Shown here piece after piece: positions 9,782 to 24,638 of a DNA stretch of 64,000 nucleotides (positions within the stretch are counted from its first letter, which is position 1; each line of letters starts with the position of its first letter). The stretch covers positions 186,001 through 250,000 of IMG/VR virus record IMGVR_UViG_3300023184_000026; one strand, 5' to 3'. The notes beneath the pieces were generated by a model. The model searched no databases. It worked only from the letters and a program-made list of their open reading frames with translations, and was not told the DNA's origin. The position numbers were made by a program, and so were the translations under genes.

Positions 9782-10843
9782 CTATTGAAATCTACCATTG
9801 GGTGCTTTATTACACCCAATTGATTCTATGGATTTTGCTCGTCTGTAACTGTTGTTGGGAACTATTATTCCCATCAGCATGCATCTCTTTTTTAATCCAA
9901 CATCACTCAACCCAAATTGAGGACCAAGTTTTGATAAAGGAGTATTATTGACCATTTCTTGCAATTGTTCTTTTTCCGGCAGTTGAATTTTTCTGGATGC
10001 ATGGTTATGAATATTGGCACATTTTTTACAACGAATTGAACGTTGTGCAATATTTTTATCACAATCTTTACACTTTTTTTGTTCTTTTTTCTTGTTTATT
10101 GGTATGTATACATCATACTGAAAATTACTTACGGGTCTATGGTGAAACTGGATATCATCTCGTGCTTCTACCGCGAAGTTCTCAATTCGAATTTGAGTAG
10201 ACCCACCACTCTTCCAAACATCATAATCAAAATCATTGAGTAGTGGTACATTGACAATTGTGTCCAGAAGCGAAGAAATATATTCGCTTTTGAAGCATAA
10301 TGAATAATGTATTTCTATTATTTTCCACCCAGCAGCAGTAATCAAATCATGTTTTTCTTGATAATATGGTTTTAATTTTCCTATAGCGTCATAGTGCTGA
10401 TTTCCATTAATTTCTAAACATACCATTTTTTCCGGAAATGCAATATCCACAGCAAATGATCTATCTATTAATGGGGTAAATTCTGGCAAAAATTTTATAT
10501 TCTTTGACAAAATAAACTCTTTTAGTTTCTCACACGGAACTGATTTAAACTTTGAATGACGTTTCCAAACGTGCTTATCTGGATTTTCTTTTAGCCACAC
10601 TTTTCTTTTGTCAGATATTATCTTCTTGGCTTCTGATGTATGCTTACGAAAACCTCCACAATCTTTACAATAGAGTGAACGTGGCTTGGCATCTTTATCG
10701 CATTTTTCACATTTTTTAACTTTTCTTCGTTTTCTGCTTGGATTTTTTTCACACCATCTAATGTGATTTGCTTTTTTGTGGGGAGATAAGTCAAATTCTA
10801 AATCACAGTGTTGACAGGTCCATTTACTCGGTGTATTTTCCAT
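9782..10843 (-). CDS. putative homing endonuclease: Zn fingers plus DUF559/Vsr-like PD-(D/E)XK domain
   Basis: CQHC...HIRWC, CEKC/CKDC; FAVDIAFPEKMVCLEINGNQHY...GWKIIEIH; C-terminal CKDC...CKKC and HTH-like tail. Confidence 0.8.
   Translation of the reverse strand: MENTPSKWTCQHCDLEFDLSPHKKANHIRWCEKNPSRKRRKVKKCEKCDKDAKPRSLYCKDCGGFRKHTSEAKKIISDKRKVWLKENPDKHVWKRHSKFKSVPCEKLKEFILSKNIKFLPEFTPLIDRSFAVDIAFPEKMVCLEINGNQHYDAIGKLKPYYQEKHDLITAAGWKIIEIHYSLCFKSEYISSLLDTIVNVPLLNDFDYDVWKSGGSTQIRIENFAVEARDDIQFHHRPVSNFQYDVYIPINKKKEQKKCKDCDKNIAQRSIRCKKCANIHNHASRKIQLPEKEQLQEMVNNTPLSKLGPQFGLSDVGLKKRCMLMGIIVPNNSYRRAKSIESIGCNKAPNGRFQ
10133..10208 (+). tRNA. tRNA-Arg(TCT), nested antisense inside the nuclease ORF
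   Basis: GGGTCTA/TAGACCC, D stem GTGA/TCAT, TCGTG-CTTCTAC-CGCGA, CTCAA-TTCGAAT-TTGAG, ACCA; 76 nt. Confidence 0.9.
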
Positions 10844-10975
10844 ATCAATATATATCCGAAATCAAACCCAAAACGCAACATTATTTAAAAATTTTATTTT
10901 CATAGTTCAAGTCACCAATTTTTGTTTGACTTTCATAAAAACTCCGCTAGAGTAAAGTGAATGTTCTTTTTTACT

Positions 10976-11047
10976 CCTCCTATAGCTCAACGGTAGAGCG
11001 AAGAACTCATAATTCTTGGGTTACAGGTTCGAATCCTGTTGGGAGGA
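10976..11047 (+). tRNA. tRNA with CAT anticodon (Met or lysidine-Ile2); no encoded CCA
   Basis: CCTCCTA/TGGGAGG, AAGAA-CTCATAA-TTCTT, GGTTCGAATCC. Confidence 0.88.
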
Positions 11048-11095
11048 CTATTTTGTTCTTTACTTTTTATAAAAATCTGCTAGAATATCTAAACA

Positions 11096-11311
11096 ATGAA
11101 AAATATCTCATTTCGCTCTCTTGTTATTGATTTGCTTGATTCGCCTGATGGCATTCCAGAACCTACTTATGTAAAGTTGGTTGAATTTGCTGAAACAAAC
11201 CATCCAGATACATATGCTGACATTTGGGATGCCACAGAAGGTGGTGATGGGAACAATGGTTATTGTGTGTATCTTGATGAAGATACTGCACAAGAATTGC
11301 GCAAAAAGTAA
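11096..11311 (+). CDS. hypothetical early protein
   Basis: Own promoter at ~11060. Confidence 0.7.
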   Translation: MKNISFRSLVIDLLDSPDGIPEPTYVKLVEFAETNHPDTYADIWDATEGGDGNNGYCVYLDEDTAQELRKK

Positions 11312-11320
11312 TTTACACGT

Positions 11321-11394
11321 GGGAGGTTAGTTTAATGGTAAAACTGGTGCTTTATAGGCGCTTGTTGGGGGTTCGAATCCCTCACCTCCTACCA
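11321..11394 (+). tRNA. tRNA-Ile(TAT)
   Basis: GGGAGGT/ACCTCCT, GGTGC-TTTATAG-GCGCT, GGTTCGAATCC, ACCA. Confidence 0.85.
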
Positions 11395-11463
11395 CTTTTT
11401 TATTGACATTTATAAAAACTCTGCTAGAGTAGATAAAGTTAAGTAGAGGTTCTTTCATATTTT

Positions 11464-11538
11464 GGTCTTGTAGCTCAATGGTAGAGCAGTTGACTTTTAA
11501 TCAATTGGTTGTGGGTTCAAATCCCACCGAGACCACCA
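11464..11538 (+). tRNA. tRNA-Lys(TTT)
   Basis: GGTCTTG/CGAGACC, GTTGA-CTTTTAA-TCAAT, GGTTCAAATCC, ACCA. Confidence 0.93.
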
Positions 11539-11541
11539 TTT

Positions 11542-11638
11542 TCAAGTAGATACCCGTTTAATGAAAATAATCGCCCAATATGTCTGAGGCTGATTACTAC
11601 GGTGCGGAAATTGACAAATACACCGAACATCTACTTGA
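11542..11638 (+). ncRNA. putative closed-stem structured RNA
   Basis: Terminal TCAAGTAGAT/ATCTACTTGA perfect 10-bp stem; inner AATCGCC/GGCTGATT and CGGTG/CACCG stems. Confidence 0.5.
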
Positions 11639-11823
11639 TTCAATTTATCCTTACTCAAAGAAGGAGGTAACTTACTCTTTGAAGGAGGATATCAGCGATG
11701 AACCCAAAAACAAGGAGGGAGTGGGCTCGGTTCCCATAATAGTGCGTGAAAGCTCGCACCATCGCACAATTTTAGTTTGACAAAATATAAAATACGTTCA
11801 TAGTTATGTATGTTCTTTTTCAG

Positions 11824-11909
11824 GCCAACTTCGCATAATCTGGCATTGCAGCACTTTTGTAAAGTGCCGTCGAAAGACATTATCGGTTCAAATCCGTTAG
11901 TTGGCTCCA
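11824..11909 (+). tRNA. tRNA-Thr(TGT) with long variable arm
   Basis: GCCAACT/AGTTGGC, GCACT-TTTGTAA-AGTGC, variable arm GTC-GAAA-GAC, GGTTCAAATCC, TCCA. Confidence 0.8.
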
Positions 11910-11963
11910 CTTTATTTATCTCATATCGCGATACTTATGTTTGTTCTTTTTACATTTTTATTT

Positions 11964-12076
11964 GAGGCGGCGGCGTGGAAGGACACGCAGCCTTTCGAGT
12001 CTATGACAACAAGAGACCCCGCTAAGTTGCGGTTAATTGGCGTTGTCAGTTGGTATCAATTCCAACCCGTCCTCTA
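11964..12076 (+). ncRNA. tRNA-like RNA with D and T arms but an expanded central region
   Basis: GAGGCGG/CCGTCCTC, GCGT-GGAAGGAC-ACGC, GTTGG-TATCAATT-CCAAC; centre TGACAAC/GTTGTCA and CCGC-TAAGTT-GCGG. Confidence 0.55.
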
Positions 12077-12081
12077 TTTTT

Positions 12082-12156
12082 GGCCCTATAGTTTATCGGT
12101 TAGAACATTCGGTTTTCATCCGGAAGGGCGGGATTCGATTTCCCGTAGGGCTACCA
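12082..12156 (+). tRNA. tRNA-Glu(TTC)
   Basis: GGCCCTA/TAGGGCT, TTCGG-TTTTCAT-CCGGA, CGGGA-TTCGATT-TCCCG, ACCA. Confidence 0.9.
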
Positions 12157-12159
12157 ATT

Positions 12160-12261
12160 TCAGACAGAGGTGCAAGTAAGTATTCTACATCCTCTGGAGT
12201 ATTGCATAAGGTGCTTGACAGCAATAAATAACAGGACTAATTATCCTGCCTCTGTATCTGA
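12160..12261 (+). ncRNA. putative closed-stem structured RNA
   Basis: TCAGA-CAGAGG / CCTCTG-TA-TCTGA terminal stem; inner CAGGA/TCCTG and TGCAA/TTGCA. Confidence 0.45.
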
Positions 12262-12440
12262 TTTAATTTTTCGTAACGCTAAAAATCGGAAGCATGAGTG
12301 ATCAATCTTCAAAAGATTCGCTGTTGCTGTAAATATTTTCACAGGTCGCTCTGTTGAAACTCTAAAGGTTATGTCGAGCGCTAGTGACCCTTGCCGGTAT
12401 CACACAGGTTGACCTCTAATCTTTAGAGAATTCTTTTTAC

Positions 12441-12582
12441 GCAGTGTTAGTGTAACTGAACTATATGAAACAAATTGGTAGGCTGAGGCGTGCTGAACGT
12501 CGCTGGAACCAGCCAAAATGAATCATTTGCACGTTGGCTTTCCAGCCAAAAGTGGGCCGCGTGTTCGGCTCACACTGCTCCA
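12441..12582 (+). ncRNA. tRNA-Gly(TCC)-like RNA with ~70-nt insertion in the D-loop
   Basis: GCAGTGT/ACACTGC-TCCA acceptor, GTGT/GCAC D stem, TTGGC-TTTCCA-GCCAA (6-nt loop), non-canonical T arm. Confidence 0.6.
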
Positions 12583-12624
12583 ATTTTTCTTGACTTTTTA
12601 TAAATTTAGTTCACTATTACTGAT

Positions 12625-12810
12625 ATGAAACTTAACCCTGGCAATTGTTACATTCAAAAGTTCTTCAATTACGATTATGAAAAATGGGATGATGAGATTA
12701 TCAAGAACAATCCATCTTGCATCTTTCATCTGATCGAGGTTGTGAAGAACAACCCAGATGACGAAAACAACTTGTTACGAAAATTTAATCTTAATCCTGA
12801 CTTTTTTTAA
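12625..12810 (+). CDS. hypothetical early protein
   Basis: Promoter at 12590, ATG at +35. Confidence 0.65.
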   Translation: MKLNPGNCYIQKFFNYDYEKWDDEIIKNNPSCIFHLIEVVKNNPDDENNLLRKFNLNPDFF

Positions 12811-12830
12811 TTTAGTTCATTCTCTGAGTT

Positions 12831-13043
12831 ATGCACTTTTATTACTTTACCACTTATACGTCAACGGAATCCACGCAAACAGGTTTTGCTTGGAAAGTTA
12901 ATTCAGCTTTGGATAAACGCGAAGTTATAAATTTTATTTCTGCCAAGTATCACGACAACAAGCCGCCTTTTGTTTCAGAAATGAAACCGAGTAACTGGAA
13001 ATTTTGCGGTAAAATGCGCAAAGAATTGTTAAAACTTTCTTGA
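12831..13043 (+). CDS. hypothetical early protein
   Basis: Promoter at ~12797; TGA stop lies inside next TTGACT. Confidence 0.65.
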   Translation: MHFYYFTTYTSTESTQTGFAWKVNSALDKREVINFISAKYHDNKPPFVSEMKPSNWKFCGKMRKELLKLS

Positions 13044-13074
13044 CTTTCTATAAAAAACAATCAATCTATTCTAT

Positions 13075-13674
13075 ATGGGCTACACACATTATTTTAAAAA
13101 CAAACCTGCTTTCACTGATAGTCAGTGGGCTGCATTGACTGAGGACGTAAAGAAACTGATTAAAAATTCAAATGTGCCGTTGGGTGATGCCAATGGTGAA
13201 ATTGGCAGCAAGCCAGTTTTTAATAGTCGGCACATCATGTTCAATGGTATCGGTGACCCATCGTCCGCAGTGACTCCGGCGCCGATCGCGCCGGGTGCGC
13301 CGACGGGAATTAGTGCGACCGGCGGCAACGGCAGCGCGACGGTGAGTTTTACGGCGCCAAGTGACGGCGGTTCCGCGATCACCGGCTACACGGTGACGGC
13401 GACGCCAGCGGGCGGAGGCACGCCGATTACAGCGACGGGTACGTCTTCGCCGATCACGGTGACTGGGCTGACCAACGGCACGAGCTACACCTTCACGGCC
13501 ACGGCGACCAACGCCATTGGCACGGGTACAGAAACAAATATATTTGCTGATAATAACACGGTTCTCAGAGACATTGAAACAATTTTGTTTGATAAGTATC
13601 GCTTGCGATCTGATGATGCGTCTGCTGCAAGTTTGGAAATTATAGAGATTGTTTGCAAGCATCTTTCTAAATAA
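13075..13674 (+). CDS. chimeric protein: phage MGYTHY-type N-terminus, fibronectin type III domain, unrelated tail
   Basis: PGAPTGISAT...ATVSFTAPSDGGSAITGYTV...TVTGLTNGTSYTFTATATNAIGTG is a textbook FN3; encoded by GC-rich DNA 13258-13527. Confidence 0.85.
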   Translation: MGYTHYFKNKPAFTDSQWAALTEDVKKLIKNSNVPLGDANGEIGSKPVFNSRHIMFNGIGDPSSAVTPAPIAPGAPTGISATGGNGSATVSFTAPSDGGSAITGYTVTATPAGGGTPITATGTSSPITVTGLTNGTSYTFTATATNAIGTGTETNIFADNNTVLRDIETILFDKYRLRSDDASAASLEIIEIVCKHLSK

Positions 13675-13694
13675 GTTTGATATTTATTAGTATT

Positions 13695-14300
13695 ATGATA
13701 AATAACATTTTTGAAAACATCGGCGGAAATAAATTCAAAGTTGTGAATGAAACAACACTGAGTCGTGTATGGCAACACATCACCAACAGCGAAAGTTTTG
13801 CTGTTATTTCTCCATTCAGAAATGAAAATACTTTAGAAAAGAACATGCAGTTGTTTGCACAATTAAAAGCAGATGTGCGTGCTTTGAAGCATGGATATAT
13901 TGAGCAAAAGTCTGGATATACATATGATGATGGCACTCCTGCTGAAGAAAGATCATTGTTTATTCCAGAAATTTCATTTGATGATGCAGTAAAGTTGGGT
14001 AAAAAATATGTTCAAGAAACCATCATTTATAAAGATGCACAACAGTTTGTTCTTTATAATCCAACGTCAAAACAAATTGTGATGAACTTTTCCAAAAAGG
14101 ATGCTGTTACATTCAATCCAGATGTTCTGAAATATGCTTATTCTCAATTCTTAAACAGCAGAACCAAAAACTCTATGAAGCCGTTTGCATTTGTTGCAAC
14201 AGAAGAATATCATATACCCAGTCGCACAGATTCATATGCAGCAATGAAAGAAAACAAAGGTTTGGCTGTTGGTCAATGGAAAATTTTGTTTAGTTATTGA
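13695..14300 (+). CDS. conserved-looking phage protein with late-type upstream motif
   Basis: TLSRVWQH...FAVISPFR...EERSLFIP...GKKYVQETI; preceded by ATATTTATT rather than the early repeat. Confidence 0.75.
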   Translation: MINNIFENIGGNKFKVVNETTLSRVWQHITNSESFAVISPFRNENTLEKNMQLFAQLKADVRALKHGYIEQKSGYTYDDGTPAEERSLFIPEISFDDAVKLGKKYVQETIIYKDAQQFVLYNPTSKQIVMNFSKKDAVTFNPDVLKYAYSQFLNSRTKNSMKPFAFVATEEYHIPSRTDSYAAMKENKGLAVGQWKILFSY

Positions 14301-14331
14301 CTTTTATAAAAACATTGTTAGTGTTGGGATA

Positions 14332-14426
14332 GTCAATCAACAGAAGCCGTAGCCTAGCGGACGCGCGGTGGGATACTGCCAGCGAAGCATTGCAGAATGA
14401 ATTAGGTCATGATGCAGTTGATTGAC
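14332..14426 (+). ncRNA. putative promoter-driven structured RNA
   Basis: Begins at the +35 position of promoter 14297 where an ATG normally sits; GTCAATCAAC/GTTGATTGAC perfect terminal stem. Confidence 0.6.
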
Positions 14427-14696
14427 AGGTTCTTTATTCAAATAATTTCCGAGGATTGATCTCCTTGGACTCTCATAATACCAACAGACTTCACGAACCT
14501 ATTGATGTTTTGGTTGCCGACAGGTATAAATCTTGATAATAATGAAATAGGCATTGGTCAAGACTGTGCGGCAACGTTAGGTGTTATGAGAGAAATTTTT
14601 ACCGTAGCGAGTTGGTCTCGTAAGTGGGTGGCGCATACTTTACAAACACGCCAGATTTGTCTCGACTTTTTATAAAATTTAGGTCTTAATATATAT

Positions 14697-15296
14697 ATGC
14701 CTCGTAAATCAATTGCTCGCATTGTTCGACCCTCTGGTATTGAAACCAGCGGCAACGGAAAATATTTTTATTGGAAATGCATTGTTTCTGGTCAAGAAAC
14801 ATTTGCTCCAGAACCACGCTTCAAGGATGTTGTCAAGAAATATGGCACTGAAGAAAAGCTGTTCAAGAATTATGTGCTGCGACCTGTTCAGAAATATGTG
14901 GATGCTGGATGGGATTCTGACAGCATCCTAGCCATTCTGAAAGCAAATGATGGCAAGCTGCCAGCATTGGACAATAAGACTGCAAAGGCTGTTAAAAAAT
15001 CCAAAGCATCCAAGAATCTATCTGTGTGTGAGGTTGAGCTAGTCAAACAGCCAGAACAGCCCAAGGTGTTGATTTTTCCTTGGAGCGGCAATCCCGACTA
15101 CTTCAAGAGTCCGCACATGCCTCTCAATTTTGAGAATGAAACTAAAAATAGTTGCGTGTATCCCAATCGCAATCTCAATGATCGTTGCTTTGGCTGTTCT
15201 GTTTATGATGTATGCCAATCGTCTGTCAAGTATTCTCTTGACGACATGAAAAAAACAACCAGTTCAGCAAAAGTCACCAAGTTGAAGTCATTTTAA
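14697..15296 (+). CDS. hypothetical protein with Cys cluster
   Basis: WKCIVSG; C-terminal CVYP...CFGCSVYDVC. Confidence 0.75.
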   Translation: MPRKSIARIVRPSGIETSGNGKYFYWKCIVSGQETFAPEPRFKDVVKKYGTEEKLFKNYVLRPVQKYVDAGWDSDSILAILKANDGKLPALDNKTAKAVKKSKASKNLSVCEVELVKQPEQPKVLIFPWSGNPDYFKSPHMPLNFENETKNSCVYPNRNLNDRCFGCSVYDVCQSSVKYSLDDMKKTTSSAKVTKLKSF

Positions 15297-15341
15297 AAAA
15301 TAAGTCTTGCTTTTTATAAAAACTCTGTCATTGTTTTATTT

Positions 15342-15680
15342 ATGGATCTTTTAACTCTTCGCCAAACCGACCTTATTGTTTCAAGCATTCGCAAAGTATT
15401 TGAAACAAATGACATCAATTATTTAAGCAGCTCTGCTTACAAGTTTCTTAATTTGTCAAGCGGATTCATTGCTCACTATAATCTTTATGGATTTCGTGCT
15501 GCTTATGACAATGTGAATGATCTCAAGGCTCAATTGGCTCAAAGTTATGCAGCAAATCAATGGAGCAATTTTCGGCCAGGTGAGCGTGATTATGATTATA
15601 TGATGCAAAAGAAAGAAATTTACAATCGAATCTGCTCATTGTTTCAGAATGAAGGATACCAATTGAATAGGAGTTGGTAA
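15342..15680 (+). CDS. hypothetical early protein
   Basis: GFIAHYNLYGF; promoter 15307. Confidence 0.75.
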   Translation: MDLLTLRQTDLIVSSIRKVFETNDINYLSSSAYKFLNLSSGFIAHYNLYGFRAAYDNVNDLKAQLAQSYAANQWSNFRPGERDYDYMMQKKEIYNRICSLFQNEGYQLNRSW

Positions 15681-23827: not shown

Positions 23828-23893
23828 AACAAAAGGAGGAAATAACCTCCTTTTTTTTATTGCAATTTATAATAAATGTGCTAGAGTATCTGA

Positions 23894-24166
23894 ATGATGA
23901 ACACCACTGCCTCGTTCGCCGCTCGTGTCGCCGCCTTTCACGCCGCCAATGCGGTCGCAGCCGCCAATGCCAAGTACGCCGACTATCGTGTGTACCGCAC
24001 AGAGGGCGACCGCCGTGTCCTCACGGTTGAGGTGTCGTTTCCCAACGACGTTCGCAATGCCAACTTCGGCGACGTATGCTTCTACGACGCTGCCACCGAC
24101 ACCTTTCGTGACAGCACGGAGGTTGATGTGGCTGGTACCACGTTCTATGTTGAGCGGGTGGCGTGA
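23894..24166 (+). CDS. hypothetical early protein, GC-rich
   Basis: Promoter ~23859; last gene of the array. Confidence 0.7.
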   Translation: MMNTTASFAARVAAFHAANAVAAANAKYADYRVYRTEGDRRVLTVEVSFPNDVRNANFGDVCFYDAATDTFRDSTEVDVAGTTFYVERVA

Positions 24167-24294
24167 TCCACGCCACCCCCGCACGGGTGGCGGGGGGGGG
24201 GGGACGGTGGCTTTAACCCCCCACCCCTCCCCCCTATAGGTGGGGGGTTTGGTGCCTTCTAGGTGGGGTAACCCCCCCCCCCCCACGGGGGTCC
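24167..24294. other. GC-rich hairpin plus poly-G/poly-C tracts marking the end of the early module
   Basis: CGCCACCC/GGGTGGCG stem, runs of ~12 G and ~13 C, two TAGGTGGGG motifs. Confidence 0.8.
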
Positions 24295-24638
24295 ATATTC
24301 ATTCTCTATTTGGTCTCAATTTTTCTTATATACTTTTCATATATACAAAAAGCATATGTTGTGCATATATTTATCATATAGTTAAAATATCATATATCCT
24401 ATACACACTTTTATGATATTATACTCTAATTTTTGAATTTAGAATTTTTCCAATTTTTTTATATATACTTTTCATATATATCAAAAGTACCTTTTTCCAT
24501 ACCTACTTTTTCACATCATGCCCTTTGTTTTTTGAAAAAAACACGGGGCAATTTTTCATACCCAACTTTTTGTATATATCATGCATTGTTTATGTTTATA
24601 TGTACATAAATGTTTTGAGCATATACTTATTGATATAT

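What the first reader, a model, noticed from the sequence alone, without database searches (positions are those of the whole stretch)
13258..13527. 270-bp GC-rich fibronectin-III domain spliced in frame into an AT-rich phage gene
Seen: an abrupt switch to GC-rich, GCG/ACG/GGC-coded DNA for 90 codons encoding one FN3 repeat, joined at ...FNGIGD| and |TETNIF.... Known: such FN3 repeats are typical of large bacterial surface proteins. Inference: very recent capture from a GC-rich bacterium (possibly the host), creating a three-part chimera; a host clue and a snapshot of gene birth in the array.
Basis: partly seen in the sequence, partly recalled or inferred. Interest (0 to 1): 0.65.

Follow-up and report, generated by a model that had tools for sequence, protein, structure and literature searches.

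The report
Foreign FN3 domain replaces phage gene core
In one clone of a 297-kb freshwater jumbo phage, a single GC-rich fibronectin-III repeat from an unidentified GC-rich organism has replaced, in frame, the conserved middle of a small phage gene of unknown function; it is a real and recent example of ordinary phage gene mosaicism, not an insertion into an intact gene and not a clue to the host.

Summary
Window 13258-13528 (271 nt, 68.5% GC) is the most GC-rich stretch of the 297-kb, 37%-GC phage genome. It has foreign codon usage (four-fold GC3 0.80 against 0.27) and encodes the genome's only FN3 domain, read in frame inside ORF 13075..13674.

It is not an assembly artefact. The same junctions occur in 12 contigs from separate assemblies and in bridging Logan contigs at the same depth as the flanks.

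It is a replacement, not an insertion. Sister phages (94-99% identical flanks) and a minor allele in the same lake carry 349-352 nt of AT-rich native sequence there. That deleted stretch held almost every invariant residue of a family of 133 protein clusters of about 225 aa.

The insert is almost exactly one period of a tandem FN3 array of the kind found in giant surface proteins. Its composition matches such arrays, and each junction shares only about 3 nt with the phage sequence.

No near-identical donor was found: about 87-89% nt in lake contigs, 79% or less in anything I could fetch.

The phage shows almost no Shine-Dalgarno use, and its nearest cultured relatives infect Microcystis and Flavobacterium. 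The donor is therefore probably not the host.

The most likely outcome is a tolerated in-frame loss of the ancestral function. A new function is possible but untested.

The parts
13075..13674 (+). Chimeric ORF of 199 aa plus stop: native N part, foreign FN3, native C part.
   Evidence: ORF list. The exact protein (P0027) is encoded on 12 contigs from separate assemblies. The six contigs fetched are 100% identical to the window over 1.3-6.6 kb.
13075..13257 (+). Retained first 61 codons of the native gene (strand 1, helix 1 and strand 2 of its N domain, ending ...FNGIGD).
   Evidence: 97%, 93% and 87% aa identity to L002, L003 and L004. Nucleotide homology to relatives stops exactly at 13257. 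Secondary structure is taken from the AF2 model of the native protein.
13258..13528 (+). Foreign GC-rich segment of 271 nt: a Pro/Ala-rich linker plus one complete FN3 domain, roughly one period of a tandem FN3 array.
   Evidence: GC 0.685 and four-fold GC3 0.80. Pfam fn3 E 2.2e-13. AF2 and Foldseek give an FnIII fold. The units of tandem arrays L167 and L168 align over the whole of 13259-13529 at 72-79% nt. Lake contigs at about 87-89% nt show a 282-nt repeat period.
13529..13674 (+). Retained last 48 codons plus stop of the native gene (a linker and a two-helix C-terminal hairpin).
   Evidence: Homology to L002 resumes at 13529. From about 13543 to the stop there is one mismatch against native allele L176. 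The helices appear in both AF2 models.
13255..13257 (+). Left junction. The GAC is present in the phage (GGTGAC) and at the end of the linker of the donor-type arrays seen in lake contigs, giving about 3 nt of possible microhomology.
   Evidence: Alignment A1. Letters between repeat units in X7 and X12 contigs end ...CTCGAC before the insert-like sequence (table 5c). This is inferred from about 88%-identical relatives, not from the true donor.
13529..13531 (+). Right junction. The CAG is shared by the native alleles (..CCCAGAAAC) and by the donor-type linker (..GTACCAGCTC), giving about 3 nt of possible microhomology.
   Evidence: for the native alleles; table 5c for the donor-type linker. Inferred.

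Best explanation
Shown:
- A 271-nt piece of GC-rich foreign DNA (13258-13528) has replaced, in frame, the central 349-352 nt of a conserved jumbo-phage gene of about 225 aa and unknown function.
- The piece equals almost exactly one repeat period (linker plus one domain) of a tandem FN3 array, of the kind found in giant bacterial surface proteins.
- The event is real and confined to one clone. It is younger than the split from sister strains whose flanks are 94-99% identical.
- The native allele still co-occurs at low depth in the same lake and dominates in another.

Inferred mechanism: two illegitimate crossovers or template switches, each at about 3 nt of shared sequence (GAC on the left, CAG on the right). 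Both fall in the inter-domain linker of the donor array, one period apart.

Inferred consequence:
- The swap removes strands 3-5 and helix 2 of the N domain, together with almost all family-invariant residues (H64 E65 T66, F76-x-F78 C79 K80 T81 A82-x-K84 P85 Y86 D87, V90, S108 D109 G110).
- It also removes the small PriA-3'BD-like beta-barrel. The ancestral activity is therefore almost certainly lost.
- The product would be an intact FN3 domain tethered between a 61-residue N remnant and a two-helix C hairpin.
- I think it is most likely a tolerated, in-frame null or neutral allele of a dispensable accessory gene, not a newly functional gene.

The donor is an unidentified GC-rich (63-70% GC) organism of the lake community, and probably not the phage's host.
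For: Real, not an artefact:
- 12 contigs from ENA, JGI and Logan assemblies encode the exact protein. The six fetched are 100% identical to the window.
- In run X5 (another sample and study), contigs 13196-13493 and 13464-13598 bridge both joints with no differences. Their depths are 748 and 776, against 796-840 in the flanks.

Replacement, not insertion:
- L002 (226 aa), L003 (233 aa), L176 (225 aa) and 133 family clusters carry an AT-rich native core between the same N and C parts. Only the window's protein has fn3.
- Homology breaks at 13257 and resumes at 13529.
- Reads show a joint 13257->13529 with 349 other letters between the two sides, in X5 (depth 5.6) and X7 (depth 49, on a 1,322-nt contig).
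- 349-271 = 78 nt = 26 codons, which gives the family's common length of 225 aa.

Loss of the conserved core: of 9 invariant and 14 nearly invariant columns in alignment A2, all but M1, G2, Y6, F56, N57 and G58 lie in the deleted stretch. The native AF2 model has pLDDT 88.5.

Foreign and recent:
- Four-fold GC3 is 0.80 against 0.27.
- The third-position base spectrum is A .08, C .33, G .43, T .16, against .05/.34/.45/.15 in donor-type array L167.
- There is one copy in the genome and it is the only fn3.
- The retained parts have no private substitutions at conserved positions.

One array period:
- L167 and L168 are tandem arrays with a 273-nt period whose units align across the whole insert.
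- Lake contigs at about 87-89% identity 'go back' 256-258 nt with 24-26 letters between, which gives a 282-nt period.
- 40,767 representative proteins match, led by proteins with up to 62 repeats.

Host unlikely to be GC-rich:
- A strict SD motif precedes 1 of 229 starts.
- The baseplate wedge protein is closest to Microcystis phage Mel-JY01 (44%) and to Flavobacterium phages (36.5%).
Against: - The capture is in frame, in the domain's own reading frame, and comprises exactly one intact domain. For random breakpoints the frame and strand alone would fit about 1 time in 18. That hints at selection on an expressed product and so at some function.
- The FN3 clone is about 130 times deeper than the native allele in run X5. 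It is at least not unfit, although this reflects the whole genotype.
- The retained N and C parts show no decay. That fits either recency or continuing constraint.
- The microhomology is read from relatives at about 88% identity, because the true donor was not found.
- The support comes from assembled contigs, not raw read pairs or long reads.
- A second GC-rich island (23894-24290) has kept 60-62% GC across relatives diverged by 5-9%. GC contrast alone is therefore a weak clock.
- The host is inferred, not known.
Confidence: 0.7

Rival explanations
1. Neofunctionalised chimera. The FN3 domain, held between the retained N segment and the C-terminal helical hairpin, gives the protein a new binding role. 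Selection for that product would explain why the capture is in frame and spans exactly one intact domain.
For: - The domain is in its own reading frame, complete and confidently folded.
- The breakpoints lie one array period apart in the linker.
- The clone carrying it dominates in X5 and is seen in three studies.
- The flanking parts show no decay.
Against: - Nearly all invariant residues of the host family and half of its N-domain fold are gone. In the AF2 model of the chimera, strand 1 drops to pLDDT 45 and pTM is 0.51.
- The allele occurs in only one clone among 133 family clusters.
- There is no signal peptide and no link to virion proteins in the PHROG or NCBIfam searches.
- No expression data are available.
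Confidence: 0.2
2. Assembly chimera: a GC-rich bacterial read cluster wrongly joined into the phage contig.
For: The compositional switch is very sharp. FN3-like sequences from other organisms are abundant in the same lakes, with summed depth rising over 13376-13509 in X7 and X12.
Against: - Identical junctions occur in 12 contigs from different assemblers and samples.
- Bridging contigs have the same depth as the flanks in an independent run.
- Both joints preserve the reading frame and the FN3 frame.
- Homology to native alleles resumes exactly after the insert.
Confidence: 0.01
3. Simple in-frame insertion of FN3 into an otherwise intact gene, leaving the host protein's function in place.
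For: The ORF is uninterrupted, and its N and C parts are homologous to one phage gene.
Against: - Native alleles carry 349-352 nt, about 117 aa, between the same two points. That stretch is absent here.
- It contains the family's conserved core.
Confidence: 0.02
4. The donor is the phage's own host, a GC-rich bacterium, so the insert is a host clue.
For: - The phage carries tRNAs that read A-ending codons (Arg-TCT, Ile-TAT, Lys-TTT, Thr-TGT, Glu-TTC), as expected if the host is richer in GC than the phage.
- A second GC-rich island is present.
- The best database matches include freshwater groups such as Acidimicrobiaceae MAGs and Limnohabitans.
Against: - Shine-Dalgarno use is almost nil.
- The nearest cultured relatives infect Microcystis and Flavobacterium.
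- The best matches in named genomes are only 71-76% identical and are spread over many phyla.
- No match at E<=1e-30 was found in 401 sampled Acidimicrobiia-class genomes or 401 genomes of the family of the Limnohabitans hit.
Confidence: 0.1

Closest known systems
Phage genome mosaicism by illegitimate (non-homologous) recombination, with novel joints at gene or domain boundaries (Hendrix/Hatfull model; from my own knowledge, not checked here)
   Same: A foreign segment is joined at sites with only about 3 nt of shared sequence, flanked by highly similar phage DNA. Sister genomes carry a different sequence between the same flanks.
   Different: - Both joints lie inside one small gene and preserve the frame.
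- The source is not another phage module but one repeat of a GC-rich tandem array.
- Both alleles are caught co-existing in natural samples.
Promiscuous Ig-like/FN3/BIG2 domains on tailed-phage structural proteins (Fraser et al. 2006; from my own knowledge)
   Same: A single FN3-type beta-sandwich domain appears in a phage protein whose homologues lack it. The PHROG matches of the domain are to minor tail proteins and a central tail fibre protein.
   Different: - Those domains are appended to capsid, tail or fibre proteins and leave the host protein intact.
- Here the carrier is a small non-structural gene in a region of tRNA genes and small genes of unknown function.
- The domain replaces the carrier's conserved core.
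Evolution of BACON-domain tandem repeats in crAss-like phages (PMC6949934; title and abstract seen)
   Same: Beta-sandwich repeat domains of bacterial surface-protein type occur in phage genes and act as hot spots of change.
   Different: That work concerns tandem repeats within the phage protein, with host-like composition. Here there is a single unit, compositionally foreign, in a clone-specific allele.
Tandem FN3 arrays of giant bacterial surface proteins (e.g. metagenome contigs L167 and L168; Acidimicrobiaceae MAG loci L083 and L084)
   Same: - Same domain subtype.
- Same linker motif (..SSAVTPAPIAPGAPTGISAT..).
- Same GC and third-position spectrum.
- Unit length 273-282 nt against 271 nt.
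   Different: - The phage holds one unit, not an array.
- The best identity in fetchable sequence is 79% nt and 73-78% aa, so none of these is the donor.

Membership tests
Pfam fn3 (PF00041), fibronectin type III domain | Profile match above the curated gathering score | tested here: met
   50.6 bits against a cut-off of 25, E 2.2e-13, residues 75-155, profile positions 2-79 of 84. Found again by a six-frame search of the genome at 52.4 bits.
Pfam fn3 (PF00041), fibronectin type III domain | Seven-strand beta-sandwich fold | tested here: met
   AF2 predicts strands 77-83, 87-93, 102-111, 118-122, 127-130, 138-146 and 150-158, with block-mean pLDDT 88-97. Foldseek against PDB gives 131 matches at E<=0.001. 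The top 50 listed are all FnIII domains, with TM 0.75-0.79 by target and rmsd about 2 A.
Unnamed phage protein family of about 225 aa ('MGYTHY' family; 133 clusters, no Pfam) | N-terminal M-G-Y-x-H-Y start and the F-N-G-x-G-D strand | tested here: met
   M1, G2, Y6, F56, N57 and G58 are present. Identity to L002, L003 and L004 over residues 1-61 is 87-97%.
Unnamed phage protein family of about 225 aa ('MGYTHY' family) | Conserved core H64-E65-T66 ... F76-x-F78-C79-K80-T81-A82-x-K84-P85-Y86-D87 ... V90 ... S108-D109-G110 (the invariant and nearly invariant columns) | tested here: not met
   The whole stretch is absent and replaced by FN3. The protein descends from the family but no longer has its defining core.
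Unnamed phage protein family of about 225 aa ('MGYTHY' family) | C-terminal two-helix hairpin (..ILFDKYRLRS..CKHLSK) | tested here: met
   45 of 47 residues are identical to P0127. Helices 163-173 and 179-197 appear in the model.
Ig-like/FN3 decoration domains of phage virion proteins | The carrier is a virion structural protein (capsid, tail or fibre) | tested here: inconclusive
   The native protein has no PHROG, Pfam or NCBIfam family. Its only fold resemblances are weak: PriA 3'BD at Z 6.5 and an ArdC-N-like cluster at TM 0.48. It lies beside tRNA genes, not among the baseplate genes at 47.9 kb. Virion proteomics was not possible.
Intein or homing-endonuclease insertion | In-frame insert with splicing blocks or an endonuclease domain, leaving the host protein complete after removal | tested here: not met
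   The insert is entirely linker plus FN3. Removing it does not restore the host protein, because 349 nt are missing.
Diversity-generating retroelement target | A near-identical template repeat elsewhere in the genome | tested here: not met
   The 270-nt segment has a single match, itself, in the 297-kb genome. tblastn finds no second copy.

The most novel reading that the evidence does not exclude
The capture of exactly one array period, in frame and with both breakpoints in the inter-domain linker, is not luck followed by drift. It would reflect either a mechanism that mobilises single FN3 repeat units out of tandem arrays into unrelated genes (for example one-unit excision products or template switching at linkers), or positive selection for a new FN3-displaying phage protein. 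On that reading this clone and its co-occurring native allele are a natural before-and-after pair for domain-level gene innovation.
Probability: 0.1. Interest if true: 0.6.

Novelty: new member of a known kind. Interest (0 to 1): 0.4.

Why it matters
The case is unusually clean and well bounded. It shows domain-scale horizontal transfer into a phage gene with both joints defined to within a few bases. The ancestral allele is known, and both alleles are present in public lake metagenomes. That makes it a useful worked example for three things: how illegitimate recombination builds mosaic phage proteins, how long compositional contrast lasts, and why a foreign island is not by itself a host clue. 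It does not reveal a new kind of system. Its functional meaning is probably the loss of an accessory gene's activity.

Tried and rejected
Donor searches, none of which found a near-identical source:
- blastn of the insert against 50,697 phage records: no match.
- Peptide-pattern scan of 185,579 species genomes. Best 73-76% aa and 71-75% nt, scattered over many phyla.
- BLAST of the insert against 401 sampled genomes of the class of the Acidimicrobiaceae hit and 401 of the family of the Limnohabitans hit. Nothing at E<=1e-30, but only two candidates per genome were scored.
- The 5.8-billion-protein search, which admits only proteins of 110-348 aa: best 69-78%.
- The exhaustive representative search: 40,767 hits, led by giant multi-repeat proteins, mean identity 70% or less.
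- Metagenome scan with a codon-degenerate linker pattern. It returned the phage's own contig plus two tandem-array contigs at 72-79% nt.
- The lake contigs at about 87-89% seen by read laying could not be fetched for binning.

Function of the native gene:
- Pfam gave only weak sub-threshold hits: PriA_3primeBD at E 7e-4 and a phage ProQ-C-like domain.
- PHROGs and NCBIfam gave nothing.
- Foldseek against PDB gave no match at E<=0.001.
- VIA-align gave Z 6.5 to the PriA 3'BD for residues 124-177, and Z about 5 to AdoMet-decarboxylase-like folds for the N domain. These are within the noise range the tool itself states.
- The Atlas returned only 'hypothetical' viral clusters and a weak ArdC-N-like row at TM 0.48.

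Other checks:
- No paralogues of the N or C part in the genome, so there is no 'array' of this gene.
- The promoter and terminator scan around the gene was uninformative.
- My six-frame GC3 scan was swamped by out-of-frame collagen repeats and was discarded.
- The other large GC-rich stretches (genome 5006-8190 and 288122-289149) were rejected as foreign. They are Gly-X-Y repeats; four-fold GC3, measured on the first, is 0.28.

Full report
**Context.** The window is bases 186001-250000 of a 297,258-bp IMG/VR virus record. CheckV rates it 100% complete, and it has 37.1% GC. It is a myovirus-like jumbo phage, with a baseplate wedge protein, a helicase, a glycosyltransferase and a carbamoyltransferase. 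Six tRNA genes lie at 10133-12156, just upstream of the finding.

ORF 13075..13674 (+, 199 aa) reads MGYTHY...FNGIGD | 90 residues | TETNIF...CKHLSK.
- Bases 13258-13527 are 68.5% GC, against 37.9% in the rest of the ORF. GC by codon position is 0.50/0.79/0.77, against 0.43/0.35/0.36 in the flanks.
- In a 200-bp scan this is the GC maximum of the whole genome: 0.70, against a mean of 0.371 and SD 0.060.
- At four-fold sites 80% of codons end in G or C. The genome value is 27% (SD 0.10 over 1,928 ninety-codon windows; 99.9th percentile 0.75).
- The phage's other large GC-rich stretches are collagen-like Gly-X-Y repeats in fibre-like genes. The 1,515-aa gene has an ordinary GC3 of 0.28. Their GC therefore comes from amino-acid content, unlike the finding.
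- The 90 residues match Pfam fn3 (E 2.2e-13, 50.6 bits against a cut-off of 25).
- It is the only fn3 in the genome and the DNA is single-copy.
- AlphaFold2 predicts a seven-strand sandwich with block-mean pLDDT 88-97. Its best PDB matches are all FnIII domains.

**2. It is not an assembly artefact.**
- The exact 199-aa protein is on record on 12 contigs from ENA, JGI and Logan assemblies. They include a 290-kb and a 47-kb contig.
- The six places fetched are 100% identical to the window over 1.3-6.6 kb.
- I laid Logan contigs of four runs on 11500-15500. In run X5 (a sample and study not flagged as the source), contigs 13196-13493 and 13464-13598 bridge both joints with no differences. Their depths are 748 and 776, against 796-840 in the flanks.
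- These are contigs, not raw reads. Read-pair support is still worth getting, but a chimera reproduced identically by several assemblers and samples is not credible.
- The full stretch is held by runs from three lake or freshwater studies of 2018-2019.

**3. It is a replacement, not an insertion.** A scan of IMG/VR found three related phages with the same gene.
- L002 (226 aa) and L003 (233 aa) share both the N part (97% and 93% aa) and the C part. L004 (143 aa) shares the N part only (87% aa).
- Between ...FNGIGD and ETN... L002 and L003 carry about 117 residues of ordinary AT-rich sequence, not an FN3. L004 carries the first part of that core and then ends.
- Nucleotide homology between the window and L002 stops at 13257 and resumes at 13529. 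The flanks are 94-96% identical.
- The closest native allele, L176 (P0127, 225 aa), has one mismatch from about 13543 to the stop codon of the ORF.
- The reads show the same thing in nature. A joint from 13257 to 13529 has 349 other letters in between. It occurs in X7 (depth 49, on a 1,322-nt contig with flanks 95-98% identical) and as a minor form in X5 (depth 5.6, against about 750-800 for the FN3 form).
- 349-271 = 78 nt = 26 codons, which gives 225 aa. That is the commonest length in the family.
- The foreign segment is therefore 13258-13528 (271 nt). It displaced 349-352 nt. Both lengths are 1 modulo 3, so the frame is kept.

**4. What was lost.**
- The native protein belongs to a family of 133 clusters in the 5.8-billion-protein collection. 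None of the listed members has a Pfam domain except P0171 (PF09378), and only the window's protein has fn3.
- In a 64-sequence alignment the invariant columns are G58, E65, K80, T81, K84, P85, Y86, V90 and G110. The nearly invariant ones are M1, G2, Y6, F56, N57, H64, T66, F76, F78, C79, A82, D87, S108 and D109. Everything from H64 onward lies in the deleted stretch.
- The AF2 model of the native protein (pLDDT 88.5) has three parts: an N domain of order strand-helix-strand-strand-strand-helix-strand (residues 1-110), a small beta-barrel (119-160) and two C-terminal helices (188-225).
- The chimera keeps only strand 1, helix 1, strand 2 and the C-terminal helices.
- In the AF2 model of the chimera the FN3 is confident. 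Strand 1 falls to pLDDT 45, the joints are below 50, and pTM is 0.51.
- The native function is unknown. The only leads are weak:
  - the PriA 3'-DNA-binding domain for the barrel (Pfam E 7e-4 in L003; Z 6.5);
  - an ArdC-N-like Atlas cluster at TM 0.48.

**5. Where the insert came from.**
- A codon-degenerate pattern from the linker found two short GC-rich metagenome contigs, L167 (67% GC) and L168 (63% GC).
- Both are tandem FN3 arrays with a 273-nt period. Their units align to the whole insert (13259-13529) at 72-79% nt.
- They carry the same inter-domain motif...GTGTASSASSAVTPAPIAPGAPTGISAT....
- Lake contigs in X7 and X12 are closer, at about 87-89% nt. They 'go back' 256-258 nt with 24-26 letters between, which means a 282-nt period.
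- The insert is therefore one period of such an array minus about 11 nt, and both donor breakpoints fall in the linker.
- The insert's composition is indistinguishable from L167. GC is 0.685 against 0.671, four-fold GC3 is 0.80 against 0.82, and the third-base spectrum is nearly identical. No amelioration is visible.
- The letters between units in the X12 and X7 contigs end ...CTCGAC before the insert-like sequence, and in X12 they read ...GTACCAGCTC after it. The phage has GGTGAC on the left and CCCAGAAAC on the right. The only shared sequence at the joints is therefore about 3 nt (GAC, CAG). That fits illegitimate recombination or template switching, but it rests on relatives and not on the true donor.
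- No near-identical donor was found in phage records or species genomes.
- The protein searches did no better. The representative search shows that this FN3 type is typical of giant proteins with dozens of repeats.

**6. Age.**
- The FN3 allele is seen in only one clone, with no variants across assemblies.
- The retained N and C parts have no private substitutions at positions conserved in 18 close homologues.
- Sister strains with 94-99% identical flanks have the native core.
- GC contrast alone is a weak clock. A second GC-rich island (ORF 23894..24166 plus G and C runs to about 24290) is shared at 94% aa and 91-95% nt with related phages and is still 60-62% GC there. One of those phages is on the same contig as native-core L003. 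The FN3 swap is therefore younger than that island.

**7. Host.**
- A strict Shine-Dalgarno motif precedes 1 of 229 long ORFs. A loose motif precedes 11%, against 7% at control positions, and the upstream regions are A-rich.
- The baseplate wedge protein is closest to Microcystis phage Mel-JY01 (44%), to an uncultured 484-kb phage, and to the Flavobacterium 'immuto' phages (36.5%). Two of the tRNA genes also match tRNA genes of phages, the tRNA-Glu matching the Flavobacterium phages.
- From established knowledge, Bacteroidota use almost no SD and cyanobacteria use little. This points to a low-GC host, so the GC-rich donor is probably not the host.
- How a phage of such a host met 65-70% GC DNA, twice, is unexplained.

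**8. Interpretation.**
- Shown: a real, clone-specific, in-frame replacement of a conserved gene core by one foreign FN3 repeat, with both alleles co-existing in lakes.
- Inferred: microhomology-level illegitimate recombination, loss of the ancestral function, and a donor other than the host.
- I favour a tolerated in-frame null or neutral allele of a dispensable accessory gene.
- Two read joints hint that some strains lack the whole block (12629->15302 and 12825->14452). Their shorter sides are only 24-29 letters, so this is weak.
- The main rival is a functional new chimera. Its best argument is that the capture is in the domain's own frame and spans exactly one intact domain, which random breakpoints would seldom give.
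- Nothing here distinguishes selection for a foldable, harmless product from selection for a new activity.

**9. Comparison and novelty.**
- This is phage mosaicism by illegitimate recombination, a known process.
- The passenger is of a known promiscuous kind: Ig-like and FN3 domains on phage proteins. BACON repeats in crAss-like phages are a comparable case (PMC6949934).
- It differs in three ways. The carrier is a small, apparently non-structural gene. The domain replaces the carrier's core instead of being appended. The ancestral and derived alleles are both observable in public data.
- I rate it a new member of a known kind, of moderate interest.

Noticed in passing
window 23860-24300: A second compositionally foreign island. 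A free-standing 90-aa ORF (23894..24166 +, 60% GC, four-fold GC3 0.72, no Pfam or PHROG family) is followed by about 120 nt of long G runs and C runs. It is conserved at 94% aa and 91-95% nt in three related IMG/VR phages and is still 60-62% GC there, so it is an older acquisition than the FN3.
   Followed up: partly
window 10133-12156: A cluster of six tRNA genes: Arg-TCT, Met-CAT, Ile-TAT, Lys-TTT, Thr-TGT and Glu-TTC. All but Met read A-ending codons, which fits the phage's AT-rich codon usage. The tRNA-Arg call (10133-10208 +) lies inside the 353-aa minus-strand ORF 9782..10843 (zinc-ribbon-rich, with a weak RAP-domain hit), so one of the two calls may be spurious.
   Followed up: no
whole genome (G000); upstream of 229 ORFs: Shine-Dalgarno motifs are almost absent (strict motif 1 of 229) and the leaders are A-rich. 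This suggests a host with SD-independent initiation, Bacteroidota-like or cyanobacterial. The nearest cultured relatives by baseplate wedge protein are Microcystis phage Mel-JY01 and the Flavobacterium 'immuto' phages.
   Followed up: partly
G000:C1:4718-9265 (L161) and G000:C1:288122-289149 (L162), outside the window: Very long collagen-like Gly-X-Y repeat proteins. One is a 1,515-aa ORF with about 1,100 residues of GTS/GSS/GAA triplets and a fibre-like C-terminal part. They account for the genome's other large GC-rich stretches, with normal phage codon usage in the 1,515-aa ORF (GC3 0.28).
   Followed up: partly
window 13695-14300: The gene just downstream of the chimera matches DUF3293 (E 2.7e-6, above the cut-off) and, more weakly, the S-adenosylmethionine lyase family and a PHROG 'SAM-dependent methyltransferase'. 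It is conserved next to the native gene in L002 and L003. This could be an anti-restriction-type neighbourhood.
   Followed up: no
window 11311-13075 compared with L002, L003 and L176: In L002, L003 and L176 the gene directly follows the homologue of the 71-aa ORF at 11096..11311. In this phage about 1.7 kb with four of the tRNA genes and several small ORFs lies between. Around the swap, the N part is closest to L002 (about 97% nt) but the C part is closest to L176 (one mismatch from about 13543 to the stop). This is a homologous-recombination mosaic in a hot spot for rearrangement.
   Followed up: partly
window 12629-15302 and 12825-14452: Read joints suggest that some related strains lack the whole block holding this gene and its neighbours (skips of 2,672 and 1,626 nt in X12 and X7). 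The shorter sides are only 24-29 letters, below the tool's own caution line.
   Followed up: no
window 13308, 13359, 13431: At three third-codon positions the insert has A (GGA, CCA, ACA). Several related FN3 contigs from the lakes have G there. This could be the first G-to-A drift toward phage composition or simply donor variation. Overall composition shows no amelioration.
   Followed up: partly
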